From the NCBI RefSeq assembly GCF_000143415.4, contig NW_003314298.1, positions 496,001-560,000 of the forward strand: 64,000 nt of DNA, written 5' to 3'. The notes under the pieces were generated by a model. That model made no database searches. It worked only from the letters and a program-made list of their open reading frames with translations, and had not been told where the DNA came from. Position numbers and translations under genes: made by a program. The stretch comes from Selaginella moellendorffii (taxonomy: Eukaryota; Plantae; Lycopodiophyta). Shown in pieces: positions 1-23,400 of the stretch; position 1 is the first letter of the stretch, and every line of letters starts with the position of its first letter.

Positions 1-479
1 TGTGACAGCAAGTTTCCTTCCTGACGCTATCCTCAAATCTCGAAAGCTTGGCCTTGGATGCCAAATCTCCATAGACTGAAGCACGGAGTGACTTCTATAC
101 GTTATTTAGGCTGAAAAACTACTTACTTAGAAGGTAAGCAACTTGTAAGAATGTGCAATGTTGTGCAAGTTCCTCTACTGGGTAGCCCCTAAATTTGAGC
201 GTCCCGTCATTCCCATTGGCGAGCGAGATTGCAAACTTGGTGACTGCAGTGTTGAAATATCCGGGGTCAAATAGCAGCAGATCACCATCTTGTGCTGTGG
301 CCTGCATTCAAAACAAAATGACATGTCTAAAGACAAACATGCATTGCTACCTTGTTGACCATTTCTTTGGCCAAAACAATTCCACCCTGTTTGATCTCAA
401 GCTCAAATTCAAGCCCTGTCCTGGTATCTGCAATTGTGAGTGAACCAGGGCCGCCACCCAGAGCTTGATGCTCATCCAT
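1..479 (-). CDS. Citrate synthase-like protein, paralog 1 (5' three exons only; runs off the window)
   Basis: Exons 479-351, 301-127, 75-1 with GT-AG introns give MDEHQALGGGPGSLTIADTRTGLEFELEIKQGGIVLAKEMVNK|ATAQDGDLLLFDPGYFNTAVTKFAISLANGNDGTLKFRGYPVEELAQHCTFLQVAYLL|IYGDL. This matches the N-terminus of plant peroxisomal-type citrate synthases (DPGYxNT, RGYPxEEL). Confidence 0.88.
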
Positions 480-611
480 GATGGTTTTGATATTCAGCTC
501 TCTGAAGTTCTCTGCTCTATATATGCATACTCTAAACCAGGCGTGACATCGGGACATTGGGACATCAGGACATCGAGACATTGGTGCATCCTAACATGGA
601 TCACATGCTCA

Positions 612-927
612 TTGGCGTTTTCTATAAAAGCTGGCATCTGATAAAGCCAGCAAAAAGAACAATTCCGCCCTGCTTAATGTCAAGCTCAAACTCCCTGGTA
701 TCCTCAACTGTGAGTATAGCAAGACATTGGCGTTTTTTTATAAAAGCTGGCATCTGATAAAGCCTGCAAAAAGAACAATTCCGCCCTGCTTAATGTCAAG
801 CTCAAACTCCCTGGTATCCTCAACTGTGAGTATATCAAGACATTGGCATTCTTTTATAAAAGCTGGCATCTGATAAAGCCTGCAAAAAGAACAATTCTGC
901 CTTGCTTAATGTCAAGCTCAAACTCCA
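612..927. repeat. Tandem repeat, about 115-116 bp x 2.7, containing a citrate-synthase exon-1-like segment
   Basis: Units start at 612, 727 and 843 (ttggc..tataaaagctggcatctgataaagcc..). The minus strand reads LTVEDTREFELDIKQGGIVL. Confidence 0.9.
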
Positions 928-2104
928 TATCAAGACTATACTGGGCACCACAAGACTATAAACAGCATATAGATAGATAGAGAGCTATCAAGACATTGGC
1001 GATAACTTTGGAGACCTGCGTTGGAAACACACTCATGTGGCCCCACATGAATAATGTTAAAAAAGAGATGCCATAAATCCATTGCATTCATGTAGACAGG
1101 GTCCGTGCTTCCTCGTTGGGCACAAGGGGACCAGATAAACTTTTTGGAGGGTCACTTACACCCATCTTGATCTTGCGGACGGCTCAGATGCAAACTAAAT
1201 GTCCCAAGTAGAATATTCTTTTCATGATTCATGTGATTCATGCCCATCCCGCATGCGCATGCTAGAGAGTGCAAGCGGCGTCATAGCGGCAGCAGCGTAG
1301 GCACTCTCGCGCCGCTTGCAGCTCAGCTGCCAAGCAGGCGGTGGTGGGCTGCGATCGTGGGCGCAGCGGCGGCAAGCTCAAGCGTGGGCAGTGGCGGCCA
1401 GTGGGCTCATGGCTCGGCAGCCATGGCAGCAAGCTGTGAGTGGACAGCACCAAGCAGTGAGCATGGGTAGCAGTGGGCGGTGGTGAGCAGCATGGCTAGT
1501 GGCTTGCTCATGGCTCGTGAGTAGGAGGCTGCGAGTTGTGAGCTGTGAGTGGGGTGCAAGCCTGAGCAGGGTGAGGCAAGTGCATGGGTGGGTTTGTGAT
1601 CTACGTGGTGTGAAGAGGTGGCAAGGCAGTGGCAAGTTGCTGCAACGATGAGCTGCTAGTGAAGGTGTGGGCGTGGGGCTGAATTGTTGGTGATTAAGTT
1701 CATGTATATGTCTTATGCACAGCATATGAGGTGCATGGCATCGGCATTATATGGGCATGTGTACGCTTTATGTTTTCTTGAACTAACTAAATATCCAACT
1801 ACAAGCACATCGCTTAAGCAAACTTGTAGATAATAATAGATATACTAAGAATATGCTTGGATATTTTAGGTATTATTCATTTAGATTAATCTTGTATTTA
1901 CAATTTGTAAACATGTTTATAATTTATAAACTTTTCTAAACACCTTATAGAATATTCCCATCTAATGGTAATCTTGTTGTTATAAATATTTTTATAATTA
2001 AAAAATTTCTTAAATAGGGTTTATTTTGAGTAAACATTCTTTTATTAAAACAGTTATGTAATATTTAAAATAAACAAACAAACCAAATGTAATGCATAGA
2101 AATG

Positions 2105-2586
2105 TTTTTAGTAGATCTAAACATAACTTTATAAGCTCAAAATAAAAACTCAAAGCGTAAAGGGGATTGTAGAAAATTTATAAACTTTAACAATCTAAGT
2201 CTTATTGTAGACATTTAGTTGCACATTAAGTTTGTGTTTGTTTTTCATTGGAGATATGCTATTGTTAAGAATGCTTAAAATGGTAGGAAGAAGTAAAAAC
2301 AAGACTAGAGATATTTTTATATATAAAGTTGATACTAGTGTGTCAATTCGATCAAATAAATTATCTGTATCATGCCAATAAAACAATTCCAACCCATGAA
2401 AACACTAGTATTAACTTTATACATTCTTGTTTTTTCTTCTTAGCATTTTAAACAACGAAAGTATTCTTAGCAATAGTATATCTACCACTGAAAAAACAAA
2501 CACAAACTTAATATGCAACTTAAAGTTCATAAATTTTCACAAGTTTTTATTTTGAGCTTATGAAGTTATGTCTAGATCTGCTAAAA
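2105..2586. repeat. Long imperfect inverted repeat (foldback/MITE-like)
   Basis: Arms about 2105-2341 and 2402-2586 are reverse complements in five successive blocks, e.g. ttttagtagatctaaacataactttataagctcaaaataaaaact vs agtttttattttgagcttatgaagttatgtctagatctgctaaaa. Confidence 0.85.
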
Positions 2587-2982
2587 GAATGTGTAACAGT
2601 TTGTTTCAGTTCTGTAAACTTAATGTCAAACTAAATATCCTAAACTTAATGTTCCACTCGCAAATACATTTAGTTTACATCTGAACTGTCTCGAAGATCG
2701 GGTTGGGACATGGCGGGGGGGGGGGGGGGGGAGGCAGGAATGTTGTGCTTGCCTACCTGCCTCCTCTGGCTGGAAAGCCTGCAAAAAGCCTGCAAAAACA
2801 GCTGTTTGATGTCTTTTGTAAAAGCTTGCATCTGATAAAGCCTGCAAAAAGAAAAAGATTGAATGAAAAGAACTAACAGATCGCTATATAGCACATGTAC
2901 ATTATTACATAAATATGCAATTTTTTATTCTCTAAGAGTTTTTATTATTCACGTTGGTTGTTGTGTCTAGCTTGAAGAAACC

Positions 2983-5060
2983 ATGGCAGCTCCCCGTCAA
3001 TCCCGGAAAATTCGCATCATCCATCACAGGAATGGGCTCCCATACCAAAAGGATGTATTTGAACCAAGCTGTCTCAAGAGTTCCGACTTCTCCAAGGCAT
3101 GCTTCATTTTTTCGTTGGTGCAATTAAAAGACAACTTCATGTTCTTGTTCCTCTTCTCGCAGATCAAGGCTGGCGGAGATGGCAAGGGATTGAAGCTGTA
3201 TGATCCGGGATTTGTGCATACAGCTCCCGTGAAGTCCACCATTGCATTCATTGATGGGAGGAATGGGATTTTGAGATATAGAGGATACTCCGTGGAAGAG
3301 CTTGCGGAGAGAAGCACATACTTGGAGGTGGCATATTTACTGTGTAAGTATACATCTTTTCAAGAAAACGGATAAATCTTTTGTGGAACAGGTAAGGAGA
3401 ATCTCCCCACGAAGTCCCAGCTTTCTGAATGGGAAGCTGCAATCCAAAGGCAGTCCTCAATGCCAGAAGAGCTTCTGGCAAGCCACTACAGCTATGAGAG
3501 AGTGTTGTTGTGACACAATTTTGTTTTGCAGGCCCTTATTGACGCTCTTCCTCGAGATTCTCATCCAAAGCAAAACTTTGTCACAGCCTTGTATGCCCTC
3601 ATTTCATTCAATCCAGATGCAAATCCTCTAGTGGCGGTGAAGCTTTAATTTTTTCCTAGTATACAATCTTTGTCTTTGTACAAATGCAGGGACATGATCT
3701 GTACAAAACAGAAGCTGCACAAAACCTGCACATTATTCGTATAATGGGAAAGGTGATGTCTCATCCATCAATAATACATGTTTTTGGGGTCCATTGGCGC
3801 CCAGCTGGAGGCATTTTTGTTAAAATGTGCCTTTTCAGGCTGCTAGCTTGGCAGGCGCAATCTACGTTCATATGGAGGGTCAAAAGCCCATTAAAAATCC
3901 GAACAATAGTCTCAATTTTTCTGAAATGATTCTTTATATGTTCCATTCAATGTGAGCATTAAGCAAAATTTCTTGCTTTGATTTCAACTGCTTTCTGCCT
4001 TCAGGGGAGATCAAGACTTCAAGCCAAATCCCGCACTTGCAAAAGCTTTGGATGTGATTTTTATAATATTGGCTGAGCATGAACTTGGTACAGCAACAGC
4101 AGCAACTTTACACCTTGCATCAAGGTGCGTTTCTTTTGGTGTAATTTTACTGTCTGCTTTCTACTAATTTTTCAGCAGTGGAGTGGATGTTTATACAGCA
4201 ATTGCTGGAGGCACTAGTGCATTATCAGGGCCCAATGATATAGGGGCGGTTGAGGTAAACGACTATCAAACACTAGGATTTTCTGAATAAAAGTTATGAT
4301 TTTGTTAAGGCTGTTTTGGACATGCTCAATGAAATTGGAAGCATTGAGAATGTTGCATTCTACATAGAAGAAGCCAAGAAAAGGTATGAAGAAAATTAAT
4401 AAAGTATATTATACTAAATTATTTTTACTAACAGTAACACCAAACTACCTGGAATTGGCCACCGTGTATACAAGACATATGATCCTCGAGCGAAGGCAAG
4501 TGTAACAATGGCCTTTCAAAGTTACTTGACAATGTTTTAATAATGCAGCTCATTCAAAAGCTAGCAGAAGAGGTTTACGACATGGTTGGCAAAGATCCCC
4601 TGGTAGAGGTGTAATTTACATTAATAGACTTCTATTCCAGAGCCTTATGTTTTGAGTGATCAGGTTGCAGCTGCATTGGAGAATGCCATTATTGCCGATG
4701 AGTATTTTATAAACAGAAAACTGTATCCTAATGCCACCTTTCACTTGGGCCTCTTGCTTAGGCAAGTAGTTTTGCATATTCACTGACATGGTTTCAAGAC
4801 ATGCTTTGATGTACAGGGCTCTTGGCTTTCCTAAACAATTTTTTGTGGTTCTTGTCTCTATTGCCCGGATTGCTGGTCAGTTGGCACACTGGAAAGAGTC
4901 TATGAATGACCCGTCAACTAGGCTGATGAGGCCACAACAGGTGAGTAAAAATCTCTACTCTTTTATAACATTCATTCATTCATATTCTGTTTTTACATGG
5001 TCACTGCTTTTTCTCTTGCAGTGGTACACTGGGCAAAGGCTTCGCCATTATTCAAAGTAA
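2983..5060 (+). CDS. Citrate synthase-like protein, paralog 2, 14 exons, with non-canonical active site
   Basis: Manual splicing gives an uninterrupted frame with [85 protein letters not shown]|WYTG. The exact 3' end is uncertain. Confidence 0.92.
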
Positions 5061-5390
5061 TTATTTGTTTAAAAAATTTGGAACATGTGCTTGACATGTC
5101 TTGGAATTTACCCCGGTGGTGAGGATTTGCAAGAAGTAGAAGAGTTTAAAGTCTCAGCAGCGCCCAGTGGGGCATGGGACCCCGTTGCATGGCAACGGCG
5201 ACAAAGGAAGAGGAGAGCGTGGCTTTCGGACTCCTACTTCGCTGGAAGTGACGGGTCTCTTATCCTTGTTGTGTTGGCGTGTCGGTCGGGAAAGCTGGAG
5301 CAAAGAAATTTCCCGGTGAGTGTGGCATTTTCATAAACAGAAGGATTACAATAAATAAACAGACAAGATAGATCTTCTTAATAGAATTCC

Positions 5391-6835
5391 ATGGAGGAGC
5401 TTTCCATGGAGGAGCTTGCTTCTTACAAAGGGCATATAGTAGCCTTCCCTTTGCCACTCCAAGGCCATATCAATCCCATGCTCATTCTCTGCAAGGCCCT
5501 AGTGTCACTGGGCTTCTCCGTGACATTCGTCAATGCAGAGAGCAACCACAAGCGCCTCCTTGCTCACATTTCTGCCGCTCCAAGCACAGGAATCGACTTT
5601 GTTCCCATTCCCGACCACCTTGACACGCCCATCGCCACTGTCGACGTCCACAACAGCAACAATCTGCTACTCGTCCGCAACGCAGTCCGCAAGATGCGTG
5701 CTGACTTTGAAAGCGCGCTTAAGAACATTGTCAGCAATGTCAAGGTGGAGTTTATTCTCTCGGAAATGACTGTAGATTGGACACAGGGAACTGCGGATAA
5801 GTTCGGCATCCCCAAGGTGACACTTTTCACTGAGAGTGCAGCTTCACTTTCGATCCAATATCACATTCCAGAGCTCCTTGCCAAGAAACACGCTCCTGTC
5901 CGACAAGGCTGTCCAGGTATGATTTCAGCATCGTTGTTGCATCGGTGTTCGACCCTGAAACTTCTGTTTTATAAATTTTAGATCTGCAGAGTATCGACTA
6001 CTTCTCGCTTAGTGCTCACGCCGAGAAGTTGGATCCGGGATTTGCACAAAGGGTCGAAAGGAAAAAAGTTTTGTTCAAGGCAAAGTGCGTTGTGGTCAAC
6101 TTTTTTTACGCTCTCGAGCACGGAGTCTTCGCCGGTCTCCGAGCAAAATTCCATCAGACCGTGGTTCCAGTTGGTCCACTGCTGCCTCCCGCTTTCCTGG
6201 GAACCGAAAACGGGTCAAATAAGCCTACCACCTTGCCAGGTATGTGGCCTGCGGATGACACTTGCAAGCAGTGGCTGGACCATCAGCAAGATGGCACAGT
6301 TTTATACGTTTCTTTTGGGAGCAATGCAACTCTCACAATGGATGACTTTGTTCGACTTGCAAGAGGGCTGGGGCTGTGCAAGCAGCTGTTTCTATCAACT
6401 TTAGTCCCGGGTTCATCCTTGGACGAGCTTTTGAAAGTGGTGAGGAGAAATTCCGTATACGAAGGACAGTCGTGCACTGTTTCTTGGGCACCACAGCTAC
6501 AAGTCCTATTGCATCCAGCTGTTGGCTGGTTTGTCACGCACTGTGGATGGAATTCGACGCTGGAGAGCATCTGTGCGGGTGTCCCCATGTTGTGTTGGCC
6601 TCTGACGGCAGAGCAGAATCTGAATTGCAAGTTCATTGCTGACGAGTGGAAGATTGGTGTCAGATTGCTGGACGACAGTCGCTGCATTGAAGAGGTGATA
6701 ACGGGGGTTGTGGACAGCCAAGGACGCAGCCTGATGAAAACGAAAGTTAAAAAGTTGAAAGAAGCGGCCATCAAGGAATCCAAACTGATCTCTAAGACCA
6801 TTGATGATGCTCTCAGCTCTAAATCACGTTCTTAA
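5391..6835 (+). CDS. Family-1 UDP-glycosyltransferase (one intron, 5917-5981; about 459 aa)
   Basis: N-terminal PLPLQGHINP catalytic His and a complete PSPG box WAPQLQVLLHPAVGWFVTHCGWNSTLESICAGVPMLCWPLTAEQ. Confidence 0.95.
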
Positions 6836-19307: not shown

Positions 19308-19520
19308 CCTTTGATTGTCCCTGGGGAGTGCTTGGATTTGGGATTTCGGTTTAGATCTAGCTTTTGCATTGTCTAGATCTAGCTTTTTCCATTTCCTTTC
19401 TTTTGTTCTTTCCTTTCAGGATTTTGGTTTAGATCTAGCTTTTTGCATTGTCTAGATCTACCATTTCTTTCCAGCTTTTGTCATTTCTCTTCTTTTGCTC
19501 TTTCTTTCTCATTCATTTTC

Positions 19521-20453
19521 ATGGCCGATCCGCAATCTCCTCCTTTGACTCTGGAGCAGCAGTTGGTTCAATTGCTTGATGCTATGCGCTTGCAATTGAA
19601 CAACCAAACTCAGTTGATGGCGGCGTTCACGGCACATGGTAAAACTCCTCTTGCTTTTGGTGCCAATCCTCGCATTCGGCCGGAGTTCTTTCGTGGGAAT
19701 CCTGGGGATGATGTGTACCATTGGTTCGATCACTTCACGGTGATTGCCACATATCATTCTTGGGATGATGCTCGACGTTTGCGTGAGTTCCCCACATGTC
19801 TTCAAGGGACGGCATTGCAGTGGTACAATGGATTGAGCGCAGCTACTCGTGGCGATTGGAGTGTTCTTCCGGACGTCTTCAAACGCGCCTTCGGACACAC
19901 CGACGATTGTGATGATGCCTTCCAACAATTGCATCGTCTTCGCCAAGGGCCATCTGAGTCGGTGATGTAATTTGGCGTTCGTTTTCGAAGTCTTTTGCTT
20001 CGTGCGGAGCCAAATATGTCGGAGCGGATCAAGCTAGGAATGCTGTGGCCAGCACTTCGTCAAGATCTTGTCGGACTTGTGCATGCACTTGCTCCTGCCA
20101 CGCTTGACGATGCTCTTCGCTTGGCACAACGTTATGAGACGTCGCCTCTTCCACTTCTTGCTACACGTCCTTCAGCTCCACTTCCTATAAGTGATGGTCC
20201 TGTTCCCATGGAGGTTGATGCTGCTGCTACTCGAGTCCAAGGACAAGGGCGAGGATGTGGTCGTGGCCGTGACATTCGTTGCTGGGCGTGTGATGAAGTT
20301 GGTCATACTTATCGGCGTTGTCGGCGCTTTCCGGATTGGCGACCTCCATTTCCTGGGTGGAGACCTTGACGTCAACAACGTCCCGTTGGTGCTGCTGCGG
20401 TGGAAGGTTTGGATACCGAGGTGCATTTGGGAAACGAGGAGTCGCGCAGGTAA
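19521..20453 (+). pseudogene. gag: gag, with two premature stops
   Basis: MADPQSPP...LQGTALQWY...LRQGPSESV, PVPMEVD, CWACDEVGHTYRRC. In-frame stops at 19968 and 20367. Inferred natural end HLGNEESRR* at 20453. Confidence 0.88.
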
Positions 20454-23400
20454 TGGAGGGACCTTGCGCGAATAAGTTAGTGACCCCTCCATCTTTCTTT
20501 CGGGAGTATCATCAAGGGGTTCACTCAGCACCGGTTCATCCAGTGTTTACTTTCCAAGCTCGTTTTTATAACAAGAGGTCTCCTATTCTTCTCTCCGTGT
20601 TGGTTGATACAGGTTCGAGTTTATCTTCTATTGCTCAACCTGTTGCCACACGTTGTCGTCTACACTTGCGTCGTGCGGCGGATCCAGTTTTCATTCTTTA
20701 TGGCAACGGCCGTACACATGCATGTGCACGAGATGAGGTGGACCTGGTTGTGCGTGTGGGCGATCTCGAGCTTGAGTTGCAGTCGTTGCGGGTGGTGCCG
20801 AGTCAAGCTTTTGACCTCATTCTTGGTATGGATTGGTTGCAGCACAATCATGCCAAGTGTGACTTTGAGGCTTTTCCCCCTTGTCTCATACTTCCTTATG
20901 TTTCATCCATTCCTCTCACTTCCATACCTCTTCGTCCCTCTACTTCTACCTCTGCTTCCATTACTTTTGTTCCCCCATTATTTCCTCTTGTGTTTCCATC
21001 TTATTCTGCTCTTCCCTTTTCCGATCCCTCCGATGATCTTTGTGTTGCAGCTGTTGACCAGCTCATGAAGGAGTATTCTGATCTCTTTGAATTTGACCTA
21101 TCGTCTGGGGCCAAGATTGCCACACGTCATCCCATTCCAACCGGGGATGCTCGTCCAATCAAGGTTCCTGCTCGTCGTCGGTCACCCAAGGAGATCAAGA
21201 TTTTACGTGCAAACATCAAGGAGATGTTGGAGAAGGGTGTTATTCGGAAGTCACGGAGTCCTTGGGCATGTGAACCTCATCTTGTGACGAAGCCTGATGG
21301 GAGTATTCATTTCTGCATCGACTATCGTCCGTTAAATGAAGTGACGATCCCGGACATGTACCCTCTTCCTCACACTGCTGATCTCTTGGATCATCTGGGG
21401 CGAAGTCGTTGGTTCACCAAGCTAGATCTTGCTTCTGGGTATTGGCAAGTACCGATGGCTGAAGACGATATTCCTAAGACTGCTTTTCGTACACCATTTG
21501 GTTTGTACGAGTTTTTGGTGATGCCATTTGGTTTGAACAATGCTCCAGCAACTTTTCAGCAGATGATGGACGAGGTTCTTTGCGATATGCTGGAGGTGAC
21601 GGCTGACTTCATTGATGATGTCTTGATCCACTCGGAGGGGACGTGGGAGGAGCATGTTCGTGATGTTTGTAAAGTGTTGGATCGGTTACGCGACGTTGGT
21701 TTAAAGCTGAAGCGGTCGAAGTGCGTGTTTGGGTCCAAGGACACAACTTATCTTGGGTACCGTATTTCTCGTGAGGGTTTGCAAGTTGATCCTGACAAAC
21801 TTGTGGCTGTTCTGAAGTTCCCTACTCCGAAGTGTGTGAATGATGTGCAGCGTTTTTTGGGTAAGGTGCAGTATCTCGGTTGTTTTGTGGATCATCTTTC
21901 TGATCGCACTTTACCATTGCGAGCGTTGCTGAAGTCATCAACGTCATCTTTCATCTGGTCTCCCGATTGTGAGCGAGCGTTCATGAATCTCAAAGAGCTA
22001 TTGACGACTCCTTTGGTTTTGGCATATCCTGACTACACTCGACCTTTTATTTTGCGCGTGGATGCTTCTGACATTGGTCTTGGAGGTGTGTTGATGCAAG
22101 AGAGCTCGAGTGTGCTTGGTCAGCACCATCCCATTGCATACATAAGCCGTACATTACAACCAGCGGAGATGAACTACTTCACGACGGAGAAGGAGTGTTT
22201 AGCAGCAGTCTGGGGTTTCGAGAAACTTCATGCCTATCTACATGGTTCTCGGACGTTACTTGAAGGTGACCATGCTGTTGTTACTTCATTATTGAAGCGG
22301 AAGAACCTGGTTGGTCGTACGGCTCGATGGGCTTTGAAGCTTCAGATATATAATTTCGATGTTGTTCATCGCCCAGGGAGTTCTATGGCTGATGCTGACG
22401 CCCTTTCTCGAGCTCCTCTTCCTTCTCCACTCACTTCTCATGTTTCTGACGAACCTGTTGTTCCAGCATCTGTGGATTTTCTAGATGAGGATTCTGTGCC
22501 GTCGGCGGTTGCTGTCCTTGACGTTCAGTGTCCACAGGGCGTAGAGCAAGATCTACCTTCTCTGGATGAGGTTCGCGAGGCTCAAAAGATTGAGCCGTGG
22601 ATTCGAAGGCTTCGAGATGGGTTTGAGAATCCTGCATCACTTGCTGATGACTTGCCTTTTTAGCATTTACATTCTCAATATCGCCTTGAAGATGGCCTTC
22701 TTTATTTTGTGGGGACGGATCCTGATGCTCATTTACGGCTGGTGGTGCCTTCGGTGTTTATTCCGCGGTTTCTCCATGCCTACCATGATTCTCCTATTCT
22801 AGGTGGGCATATGGGACACCGTCGTGTCACCGAGAAGCTGCGCAGATCTTTCTATTGGCCATAGATGCGACGTGATATTATCCGGTATGTGCGTAGCTGC
22901 GTTTGGTGCCAAGCTCGTAATACTCCCCCTTGTGCTGCGGAAGGACGGTTGGAGTCAATTGCAGTTTCTCGTCCGTTTGAGTTGGTGGTATTTGATCTTA
23001 TGGGACCTTTTCCGCGATCGACTGCTGGCAATGAGTATGTTATTATTGCTTCTAACTACTTGACTCGTTGGGTGGAAGTTGGTGCTCTTGCTAGTGCCTC
23101 TACAACTGCTGTTGGATACTTCCTCCTCAATCGAGTGGTGTTCCAGCATTCTTGTCCAGAACGGATTCTTTCGGATAATGGTCCTGCATTTATGGCTGAG
23201 GTATTTCATGTTTTGACATCTCGGTTGGGGATACGCCACACTTTTACGAGTGCTTATCATCCATAATCAGACGGTCTGGTGGAACGGCTCGTTCGGACAT
23301 TCAAAGGGATGATTGTGAAGTATGTGAACTTTCAACATTCGGATTGGGATGGTTATTTGCCGTCTCTTCGGTATGCTTATGTCACAGGGGTGCAGAGTTC

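What the first reader, a model, noticed from the sequence alone, without database searches (positions are those of the whole stretch)
2983..5060. Intact citrate-synthase-like gene with both key catalytic residues replaced
Seen: 14 exons splice to an open frame with no stops. The canonical GPLHGGANE reads GPNDIGAVE (His->Asp, codon 4237-4239), YPNVDFYSG reads YPNATFHLG (Asp->Thr, codon 4736-4738), and LHAEHEMNCST reads [11 protein letters not shown], while GHRVYKxYDPR is kept. Established: these His and Asp residues (pig H274/D375, E. coli H264/D362) perform acetyl-CoA enolisation. Inference: it cannot be a normal Si-citrate synthase. Remodelled active-site loops on a preserved scaffold suggest a pseudoenzyme/regulatory subunit or new acyl-CoA chemistry. 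The new Asp and nearby new His could speculatively form a rearranged dyad.
Basis: partly seen in the sequence, partly recalled or inferred. Interest (0 to 1): 0.85.

Follow-up and report, generated by a model that had tools for sequence, protein, structure and literature searches.

The report
Catalytically disabled citrate synthase paralogue, Selaginella
The lycophyte Selaginella moellendorffii has an expressed, correctly spliced, very fast-evolving copy of its peroxisomal citrate synthase gene that lacks the peroxisome address and two of the three catalytic residues, so it almost certainly no longer makes citrate; what it does instead is unknown.

Summary
Window 2983-5060 (+) holds a 14-exon, 437-codon open gene.

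- **Identity:** it is a Selaginella moellendorffii paralogue of the plant peroxisomal (bacterial type II-like) citrate synthase. RefSeq calls the other allele 'citrate synthase, glyoxysomal isoform X2'; it is 96% identical with the same exon structure.
- **Expression:** spliced contigs from three studies show 12 of 13 introns removed exactly as modelled. Intron 3 is seen both spliced and retained.
- **Active site:** the three motifs that are changed here are identical in 119 of 119 canonical plant sequences. The third triad His and three oxaloacetate-binding Arg residues are kept.
- **Divergence:** the PTS2 exon is absent. The branch is about 20 times longer than its relatives' branches. 47 of 153 sites invariant in plants are changed. 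No orthologue was found in any other taxon.
- **Selection:** unconstrained drift to this divergence never left the frame open (0 of 400 simulations). Allelic pN/pS outside exon 1 is roughly 0.3, from few differences.

Best reading, at moderate confidence: a pseudoenzyme or partner subunit, possibly of the head-to-head citrate-synthase-like neighbour. A decaying duplicate and new chemistry are not excluded. This scan already found the same gene pair on the other haplotype (s1-408295).

The parts
2938..2982 (+). 5' untranslated region (minimum extent)
   Evidence: RNA contigs start at 2938 (X6) and 2961 (X4). No joint leads to any upstream exon, and there is no depth at 1000-2910.
2983..3096 (+). 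Exon 1 with the ATG. It begins at about residue 37 of the canonical enzyme, so the PTS2 part is missing. GC donor.
   Evidence: The block 2995-3067 differs at 14 nt from the allele seen in RNA and in P0151.
3163..3343 (+). Exon 2, the best conserved exon (70% identical to the plant consensus)
3392..3477 (+). Exon 3, GC donor (GCAAGC)
   Evidence: The loose end CCTTATTG at 3479 matches the start of exon 4.
3478..3531 (+). Intron 3, seen retained in all three runs. Retention gives an in-frame TGA at about 3511-3513.
   Evidence: A 92-nt unspliced contig covers 3450-3541 in X1, X4 and X6. Frame.
3532..3636 (+). Exon 4
3690..3752 (+). Exon 5
3839..3951 (+). Exon 6
4005..4124 (+). Exon 7, with [11 protein letters not shown] (4066-4098). 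The first His becomes Leu, the conserved Asn becomes Gly, and the second His is kept.
4179..4254 (+). Exon 8, with GPNDIGAVE. The catalytic His (pig 274) is replaced by Asp at 4237-4239. The acceptor is a CAGCAG pair.
4310..4383 (+). Exon 9
4435..4495 (+). Exon 10, with [11 protein letters not shown]. The triad His320 and Arg329 are kept. GC donor.
4549..4608 (+). Exon 11
4664..4761 (+). Exon 12, with YPNATFHLG. The catalytic Asp (pig 375) is replaced by Thr at 4736-4738. GC donor.
4817..4940 (+). Exon 13. Phe397 becomes Val. Arg401 and Arg422 (in MRPQQ) are kept.
5022..5060 (+). Exon 14 and the TAA stop. The C-terminal tail of the canonical enzyme is absent.
5061..5172 (+). 3' untranslated region (minimum extent)
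   Evidence: A contig of X1 runs to 5172.
1..478 (-). Context: the first three exons of a second, more divergent citrate-synthase-like gene, head to head with this one and cut by the window edge

Best explanation
This is a Selaginella-lineage paralogue of the plant peroxisomal citrate synthase.

Shown: it has lost the N-terminal PTS2 exon. It is transcribed and spliced. It keeps the citrate synthase fold, the third triad His and the Arg residues that bind oxaloacetate or citrate, including the Arg that reaches into the partner subunit's site. It has replaced the acid/base pair that enolises acetyl-CoA (His to Asp, Asp to Thr) and several neighbouring invariant residues.

Inferred: it cannot perform the Claisen condensation at a useful rate. 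Lacking any targeting signal, it probably sits in the cytosol. It probably acts without that catalysis, as a ligand-binding protein or as the inactive subunit of a dimer. Citrate synthase sites are built from both subunits. The most obvious partner is the head-to-head citrate-synthase-like neighbour, and the canonical CSY3 is an alternative. Selection has kept the reading frame open but is weak.
For: - **Gene model and motifs:**
- **Invariance of the replaced residues:** they are unchanged in 119 of 119 canonical plant sequences and in 120 further fragments. The triad definition comes from PMC9765439.
- **Expression:** spliced contigs in 3 runs from 3 studies, and 31-letter words of the gene in runs of 10 studies.
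- **Family and fold:** Pfam PF00285 at 355.7 bits. The model has pLDDT 81.7 and TM 0.84 to Arabidopsis CSY3 with OAA and CoA bound.
- **Residues kept:** H246, H320, K324, R329, N374, R401 and R422.
- **No PTS2:** no PTS2-coding exon lies upstream, and canonical S. moellendorffii CSY3 (P0155) carries RLAVLSAHL.
- **Selection:** 0 of 400 unconstrained simulations keep the frame open at 47% amino-acid divergence, and only 8% do at 10%. Both alleles are open with identical active-site motifs. Outside exon 1 there are 8 nonsynonymous against at least 7 synonymous differences where 3.4:1 is expected (binomial p 0.03).
- **Neighbour:** a head-to-head citrate-synthase-like gene truncated at the same N-terminal point.
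Against: - No orthologue exists in any other taxon in two database searches, so there is no cross-species evidence of constraint.
- Constraint is weak. 31% of plant-invariant sites are changed, against 35-55% of variable ones (p 0.09).
- The pN/pS estimate rests on about 15 differences pieced together from contigs of several runs.
- Exon 1 differs by 10 amino acids between alleles.
- Intron 3 retention, which truncates the protein, is seen in all three runs.
- Binding of ligands or of a partner was not tested.
I could not check it here, because that gene runs off the window.
Confidence: 0.5

Rival explanations
1. It is a duplicate on its way to loss. The copy lost its targeting signal and then its catalytic residues, is still transcribed from an active promoter, and now has no function. 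The open frame is a leftover of earlier constraint.
For: - It is found only in S. moellendorffii.
- The branch is very long.
- 31% of plant-invariant sites are changed, and the active site is not protected.
- The two alleles differ at 18 of 437 residues, and the exon 1 block is mostly nonsynonymous.
- Retention of intron 3 is seen in all three runs, and four donors are the weaker GC type.
Against: - The frame cannot have drifted freely for most of the divergence: 0 of 400 simulations stay open, with about 10 stops expected.
- All 13 introns still have working splice sites.
- Both alleles are intact, with identical active-site motifs.
- Outside exon 1, nonsynonymous differences are fewer than neutrality predicts (p 0.03).
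Confidence: 0.27
2. It is an enzyme with new chemistry on the citrate synthase fold, for example thioester hydrolysis or lyase activity, or condensation of another acyl-CoA and 2-oxoacid. It would use the new Asp281 and other replaced residues, and might work with the neighbouring citrate-synthase-like gene and the UDP-glycosyltransferase as a small metabolic cluster.
For: - Residues for CoA and dicarboxylate binding are kept while the acid/base pair and nearby residues are changed.
- Changes are slightly enriched near the active site.
- The motifs are identical in both alleles.
- It lies beside a second citrate-synthase-like gene and a UGT.
Against: - No known member of the family works without the Asp base. 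Every other sequence examined keeps it.
- The enrichment near the site is weak (p 0.04 to 0.26).
- The substitutions are spread over the whole protein, as expected from relaxed constraint.
- Two genes plus a UGT next to retroelements is thin evidence for a cluster.
- The geometry of the new residues could not be examined.
Confidence: 0.18
3. It is an ordinary citrate synthase after all, with other residues standing in for the missing His and Asp.
For: The fold, His320 and the Arg residues are kept.
Against: The His and the Asp are invariant in all roughly 235 other sequences checked and are part of the essential triad. From established mutagenesis of pig and E. coli enzymes (my memory), either single replacement lowers kcat by orders of magnitude. 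N249G, H243L and F397V add to the damage.
Confidence: 0.03

Closest known systems
Plant peroxisomal/glyoxysomal citrate synthase (Arabidopsis CSY2/CSY3; solved structures 9x0i, 9xau, 8qzp)
   Same: It is 53-58% identical over the full length (E 6e-162 to 9x0i). It has the same fold (TM 0.84) and nests among land-plant peroxisomal enzymes in the tree. His320, Arg329, Arg401 and Arg422 are kept.
   Different: It has no PTS2 N-terminus and no C-terminal tail. The catalytic His is Asp and the catalytic Asp is Thr. H243L, N249G and F397V are also changed, along with 47 of 153 plant-invariant sites. The branch is about 20 times longer.
Canonical S. moellendorffii 'citrate synthase 3, peroxisomal' (P0155)
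   Same: It is from the same genome and the same family. The AU test does not reject the two being sisters (p 0.25).
   Different: P0155 keeps the PTS2 (RLAVLSAHL), all three motifs and a short branch of 0.26. The organism therefore still has a normal enzyme.
Bacterial type II citrate synthase (E. coli/P. aeruginosa GltA)
   Same: About 35% identity and the same fold, including the N-terminal beta domain.
   Different: GltA keeps the His/His/Asp triad (PMC9765439). The score here is below NCBIfam's equivalog cut-off, 384.8 against 505.
Pseudoenzymes in general (inactive paralogues that pair with or regulate active relatives)
   Same: It is a homologue of an active enzyme with essential catalytic residues replaced. 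It is expressed, it has an open frame, and a related gene lies beside it.
   Different: Inactivity, binding and partnership are not shown. A full-text search found no paper describing a citrate synthase pseudoenzyme.

Membership tests
Citrate synthase family (Pfam PF00285) | Domain match above the gathering score | tested here: met
   355.7 bits against a cut-off of 27, covering residues 55-424 (run on the allele P0151).
Citrate synthase family (Pfam PF00285) | Citrate synthase fold | tested here: met
   AlphaFold2 model with mean pLDDT 81.7. The Foldseek best match is Arabidopsis CSY3 (9x0i), TM 0.84, E 7e-38.
Active citrate (Si)-synthase | Catalytic triad His274/His320/Asp375 (pig numbering) | tested here: not met
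   His274 is Asp and Asp375 is Thr. Only His320 is kept. The triad is as stated in PMC9765439.
Active citrate (Si)-synthase | Oxaloacetate/citrate-binding His238, Arg329, Arg401 and Arg421' | tested here: met
   H246, R329, R401 and R422 are kept, but the conserved Asn (N249) is Gly. The equivalence to pig numbers comes from the motifs and my memory.
Active citrate (Si)-synthase | Citrate formation from acetyl-CoA and oxaloacetate | not testable with these tools
   This needs an enzyme assay.
NCBIfam equivalog 'citrate synthase' (NF004126 / TIGR01798) | Score above the curated cut-off | tested here: not met
   384.8 against 505, and 357.6 against 485. The canonical Selaginella enzyme scores 499.6 and 459.9, also just under, because these are bacterial models.
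Plant peroxisomal citrate synthase (CSY2/3 type) | Placement within the land-plant peroxisomal clade | tested here: met
   It nests among embryophyte sequences. The exact sister is unresolved because of the long branch.
Plant peroxisomal citrate synthase (CSY2/3 type) | N-terminal PTS2 signal (RLx5HL) | tested here: not met
   The protein begins at about canonical residue 37. tblastn with the canonical N-terminus finds nothing upstream, and RNA contigs show no upstream exon.
Pseudoenzyme | Maintained by selection despite loss of catalytic residues | tested here: inconclusive
   The open frame cannot be explained by drift. Allelic pN/pS is about 0.3 with p 0.03 on about 15 differences. No orthologues were found for dN/dS.
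Citryl-CoA lyase / ATP-citrate lyase C-terminal module | Score above the family cut-off | tested here: not met
   The best score is 86.7 against 212.

The most novel reading that the evidence does not exclude
The two head-to-head, untargeted citrate-synthase-like genes encode the two halves of a cytosolic heterodimer. In it, this inactive subunit supplies Arg422 and shapes the pocket of its partner, giving a condensing or lyase activity on a substrate other than acetyl-CoA. The adjacent UDP-glycosyltransferase may then modify the product. That would be a plant counterpart of fungal alkylcitrate synthase clusters.
Probability: 0.1. Interest if true: 0.8.

Novelty: new variant of a known kind. 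Interest (0 to 1): 0.5.

Why it matters
Citrate synthase is a textbook enzyme whose acid/base pair is treated as universal. None of the roughly 235 other sequences examined here lacks it, and a full-text search found no paper describing a citrate synthase pseudoenzyme.

An expressed, frame-preserved copy that keeps the ligand-binding arginines but not the catalytic pair could serve three purposes:
- It is a natural test case for what the fold can do without catalysis.
- It may be an example of an inactive subunit in an enzyme whose sites span two subunits.
- It warns against the current 'citrate synthase, glyoxysomal' annotation when building metabolic models of this reference lycophyte.

The significance is limited by two things. 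The gene appears to be confined to one species, and constraint on it is weak.

Tried and rejected
- **Handing the spliced protein to tools:** the spliced window protein has no reference, so I did not type it into any tool. The 96% identical allele P0151 stood in for the Pfam, NCBIfam, PDB, structure and homologue searches. The window protein itself was used only in scripts.
- **Fetching the other allele's DNA or the neighbour gene:** look-ups of P0151, P0001 and two window ORFs found no record. One call failed on a frame slip of mine. A proper codon-model dN/dS was therefore impossible, and the allelic estimate was pieced together from the difference table.
- **Orthologues:** the full-length search and the search with the C-terminal half gave nothing above 53% and 64% identity outside S. 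moellendorffii, and every hit keeps His and Asp.
- **Organism B:** its run X7 held words of the gene but laid no contig.
- **Upstream PTS2 exon:** none was found.
- **Donor copy for the divergent exon 1 block:** none was found in the window.
- **Site-class test of constraint:** a first version against the plant consensus looked strong (69% against 19-27% retained). It was biased because variable sites rarely equal the consensus. The version using sites where five lycophyte-side sequences agree is weak (p 0.09).
- **Active-site geometry and the proposed Asp/His dyad:** the structure tool returns no coordinates, so this was not examined.
- **Literature:** searches found nothing on this gene.

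Full report
**What is in the sequence**

Reading 2500-5600 in three frames and fixing the splice sites gives 14 exons: 2983-3096, 3163-3343, 3392-3477, 3532-3636, 3690-3752, 3839-3951, 4005-4124, 4179-4254, 4310-4383, 4435-4495, 4549-4608, 4664-4761, 4817-4940 and 5022-5060. Together they make 1314 nt, or 437 codons and a TAA, with no internal stop.

The introns are 48-86 nt long. Nine have GT donors and four (introns 1, 3, 10, 12) have GC donors.

GPNDIGAVE has its Asp at 4237-4239. YPNATFHLG has its Thr at 4736-4738. [11 protein letters not shown] starts at 4066 and [11 protein letters not shown] at 4457.

**Whose gene it is**

A search with exon 2 against 1.8 billion representative proteins gave one 98% match, P0001. 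P0001 is 'hypothetical protein SELMODRAFT_411022 [Selaginella moellendorffii]'. A second database protein, P0151, is named 'citrate synthase, glyoxysomal isoform X2 [Selaginella moellendorffii]'.

- P0151 is 437 aa with exactly my exon structure. It differs from the window protein at 18 residues, 10 of them in the first 29. I take it to be the other allele or haplotype.
- P0001 is an older model of the same allele with several splice errors.
- The tiny introns fit this species.

**Expression**

31-letter words of the stretch are held by runs of 10 studies at shares of 0.22-0.40. That is what a spliced mRNA would give, since exons are 57% of the query.

Contigs of three runs from three studies were laid on 1000-5400. 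They skip introns 1, 2 and 4-13 at exactly the modelled positions, including GC-AG introns 1, 10 and 12. They run from 2938 to 5172, with nothing upstream.

Intron 3 is seen retained as a 92-nt contig (3450-3541) in all three runs. Retention brings an in-frame TGA. The spliced form of intron 3 appears only as an 8-letter loose end that matches the start of exon 4.

The runs are only guessed to be RNA, but contigs without introns show a spliced form. Contigs cannot give expression levels.

**The active site**

HMMER aligns the protein without gaps in these regions to solved Arabidopsis glyoxysomal CSY3 (9x0i, E 6e-162) and pineapple citrate synthase (8qzp).

| Canonical motif | This gene |
|---|---|
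| GPLHGGANE | GPNDIGAVE |
| YPNVDFYSG | YPNATFHLG |
| LHAEHEMNCST | [11 protein letters not shown] |

The three canonical motifs are identical in 119 of 119 full-length plant sequences retrieved. Only the two Selaginella entries differ. All 120 shorter citrate synthase proteins from a second search also keep the His and the Asp.

- **Replaced:** the first triad His (now Asp) and the triad Asp (now Thr). Also changed are the plant-invariant H243 (Leu), N249 (Gly), F397 (Val) and Y378 (His).
- **Kept:** the second triad His (H320), plus H246, K324, R329, N374, R401 and R422.

The mapping to pig numbers 238, 242, 274, 320, 329, 375, 397, 401 and 421 is from the motifs and my memory of the literature.

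So the residues that hold oxaloacetate or citrate and CoA are largely present, while the pair that enolises acetyl-CoA is gone.

**Family, fold and place in the tree**

- Pfam Citrate_synt matches at 355.7 bits. NCBIfam equivalog models score well below their cut-offs (384.8 against 505). The canonical Selaginella enzyme P0155 falls just short of the same bacterial models at 499.6.
- An AlphaFold2 model built on a 40-sequence alignment has mean pLDDT 81.7. Its best structural match is Arabidopsis CSY3 with OAA and CoA bound, at TM 0.84.
- In a maximum-likelihood tree the two alleles sit among land-plant peroxisomal enzymes, on a branch of 3.99 changes per column against a median end branch of 0.18.
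- The sister group is unresolved. An AU test does not reject a sister relation to S. moellendorffii's own CSY3 (p 0.25).
- Nothing above 53% identity (full length) or 64% (C-terminal half) exists in any other taxon in the 5.8-billion-protein collection. No orthologue was found, though other Selaginella species may simply be missing from the collection.

**Targeting**

Canonical P0155 starts with the PTS2 RLAVLSAHL. This gene starts at about canonical residue 37. tblastn with the canonical N-terminus finds nothing upstream, and RNA contigs show no upstream exon. The C-terminal tail of the canonical enzyme is also absent. A cytosolic location is my inference.

**Is it kept by selection?**

*For selection:*
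- Random substitution of the coding sequence up to the observed 47% amino-acid divergence produced on average 9.7 stops and never an open frame (0 of 400). Even 10% divergence leaves only 8% of frames open.
- Both alleles are open, share all active-site substitutions and keep 13 working introns.
- Outside exon 1, the alleles differ by 8 nonsynonymous changes and at least 7 synonymous ones, where neutrality predicts 3.4:1. That gives pN/pS of about 0.3 (binomial p 0.03).

*Against strong constraint:*
- The pN/pS count is small. It was assembled from contigs of several runs, and some synonymous calls are inferred.
- 47 of 153 sites invariant in plants are changed. That is 31%, against 35-55% at variable sites (p 0.09).
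- Invariant sites near the active centre are changed somewhat more often than elsewhere: 37-42% against 26-28% (p 0.04-0.26).
- The exon 1 block 2995-3067 differs at 14 nt between alleles, 11 of them nonsynonymous. The rest of the gene differs by 1-2%. I cannot explain this block.

The gene has clearly been under selection to stay translatable for most of its history. Present-day constraint is weak, and a recent loss of function cannot be ruled out.

**Surroundings**

- On the minus strand, 2.5 kb upstream, lie the first three exons of a second citrate-synthase-like gene (ATG at 478). It is 34-40% identical over exons 2-3, starts at the same truncated point and is cut by the window edge.
- A 116-bp tandem repeat (610-926) consists of copies of part of that gene's first exon. 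A short piece of the same unit lies about 130 nt before our ATG.
- Downstream is a UDP-glycosyltransferase (5391-6835, PF00201), followed by retroelement ORFs.

Earlier notes of this scan describe the same pair on another piece of this genome, presumably the other haplotype. They state that the neighbour keeps its catalytic residues (s1-408295). I could not test that here. They also propose a small gene cluster (s1-392363, s1-408525), for which I see only adjacency.

**Verdict**

That the protein is not a normal citrate synthase is well supported. I rate the possible roles as follows:

| Reading | Confidence |
|---|---|
| Non-catalytic role: ligand binding, or the inactive partner in a dimer whose sites span both subunits, most plausibly with the neighbour | 0.5 |
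| Duplicate in late decay | 0.27 |
| New chemistry | 0.18 |
| Ordinary citrate synthase activity | 0.03 |

It is a new variant of a known family rather than a new kind of system. No paper on it was found. It would need the enzyme, binding and orthologue tests listed under next steps to become more than a curiosity of one species.

Noticed in passing
window 1-478 (- strand): The first three exons of a second, more divergent citrate-synthase-like gene lie head to head with the gene studied. It also starts at about canonical residue 37 without a PTS2, and the rest lies outside the window.
   Followed up: partly
window 610-926 and about 2826-2850: A 116-bp tandem repeat (2.7 copies, 96% alike) is made of copies of part of the neighbour gene's exon 1 and intron. 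A roughly 25-nt piece of the same unit sits about 130 nt upstream of the studied gene's ATG, next to an 11-nt repeat at 2774-2798.
   Followed up: partly
window 3097, 3478, 4496, 4762 (donor sites): Four of the 13 introns have GC-AG borders, which is far above the usual share of about one in a hundred. Three are confirmed by spliced contigs.
   Followed up: partly
window 3478-3531: Intron 3 (GC donor GCAAGC) is retained in contigs of all three runs. Retention gives an in-frame stop and a product of about 140 residues. The old JGI model P0001 instead used a GT 24 nt further on, which would leave a 30-nt intron.
   Followed up: partly
window 2995-3067: A block of 14 nt differences (11 nonsynonymous) separates this window from the allele seen in RNA and in P0151, against 1-2% elsewhere in the gene. 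The window's version of exon 1 was not seen in the three runs laid. No donor copy is in the window. Unexplained.
   Followed up: partly
window 5391-6835 (+): A UDP-glycosyltransferase (PF00201) lies in two reading frames, which means either an intron or a frameshift near 5980-6030.
   Followed up: no
window 19443-22663 (+): Ty3-type retrotransposon ORFs are present: gag, aspartyl protease, reverse transcriptase and RNase H.
   Followed up: no
window 2717-2732: A run of about 16 G lies some 250 nt upstream of the ATG, in the region shared by the two divergent genes.
   Followed up: no
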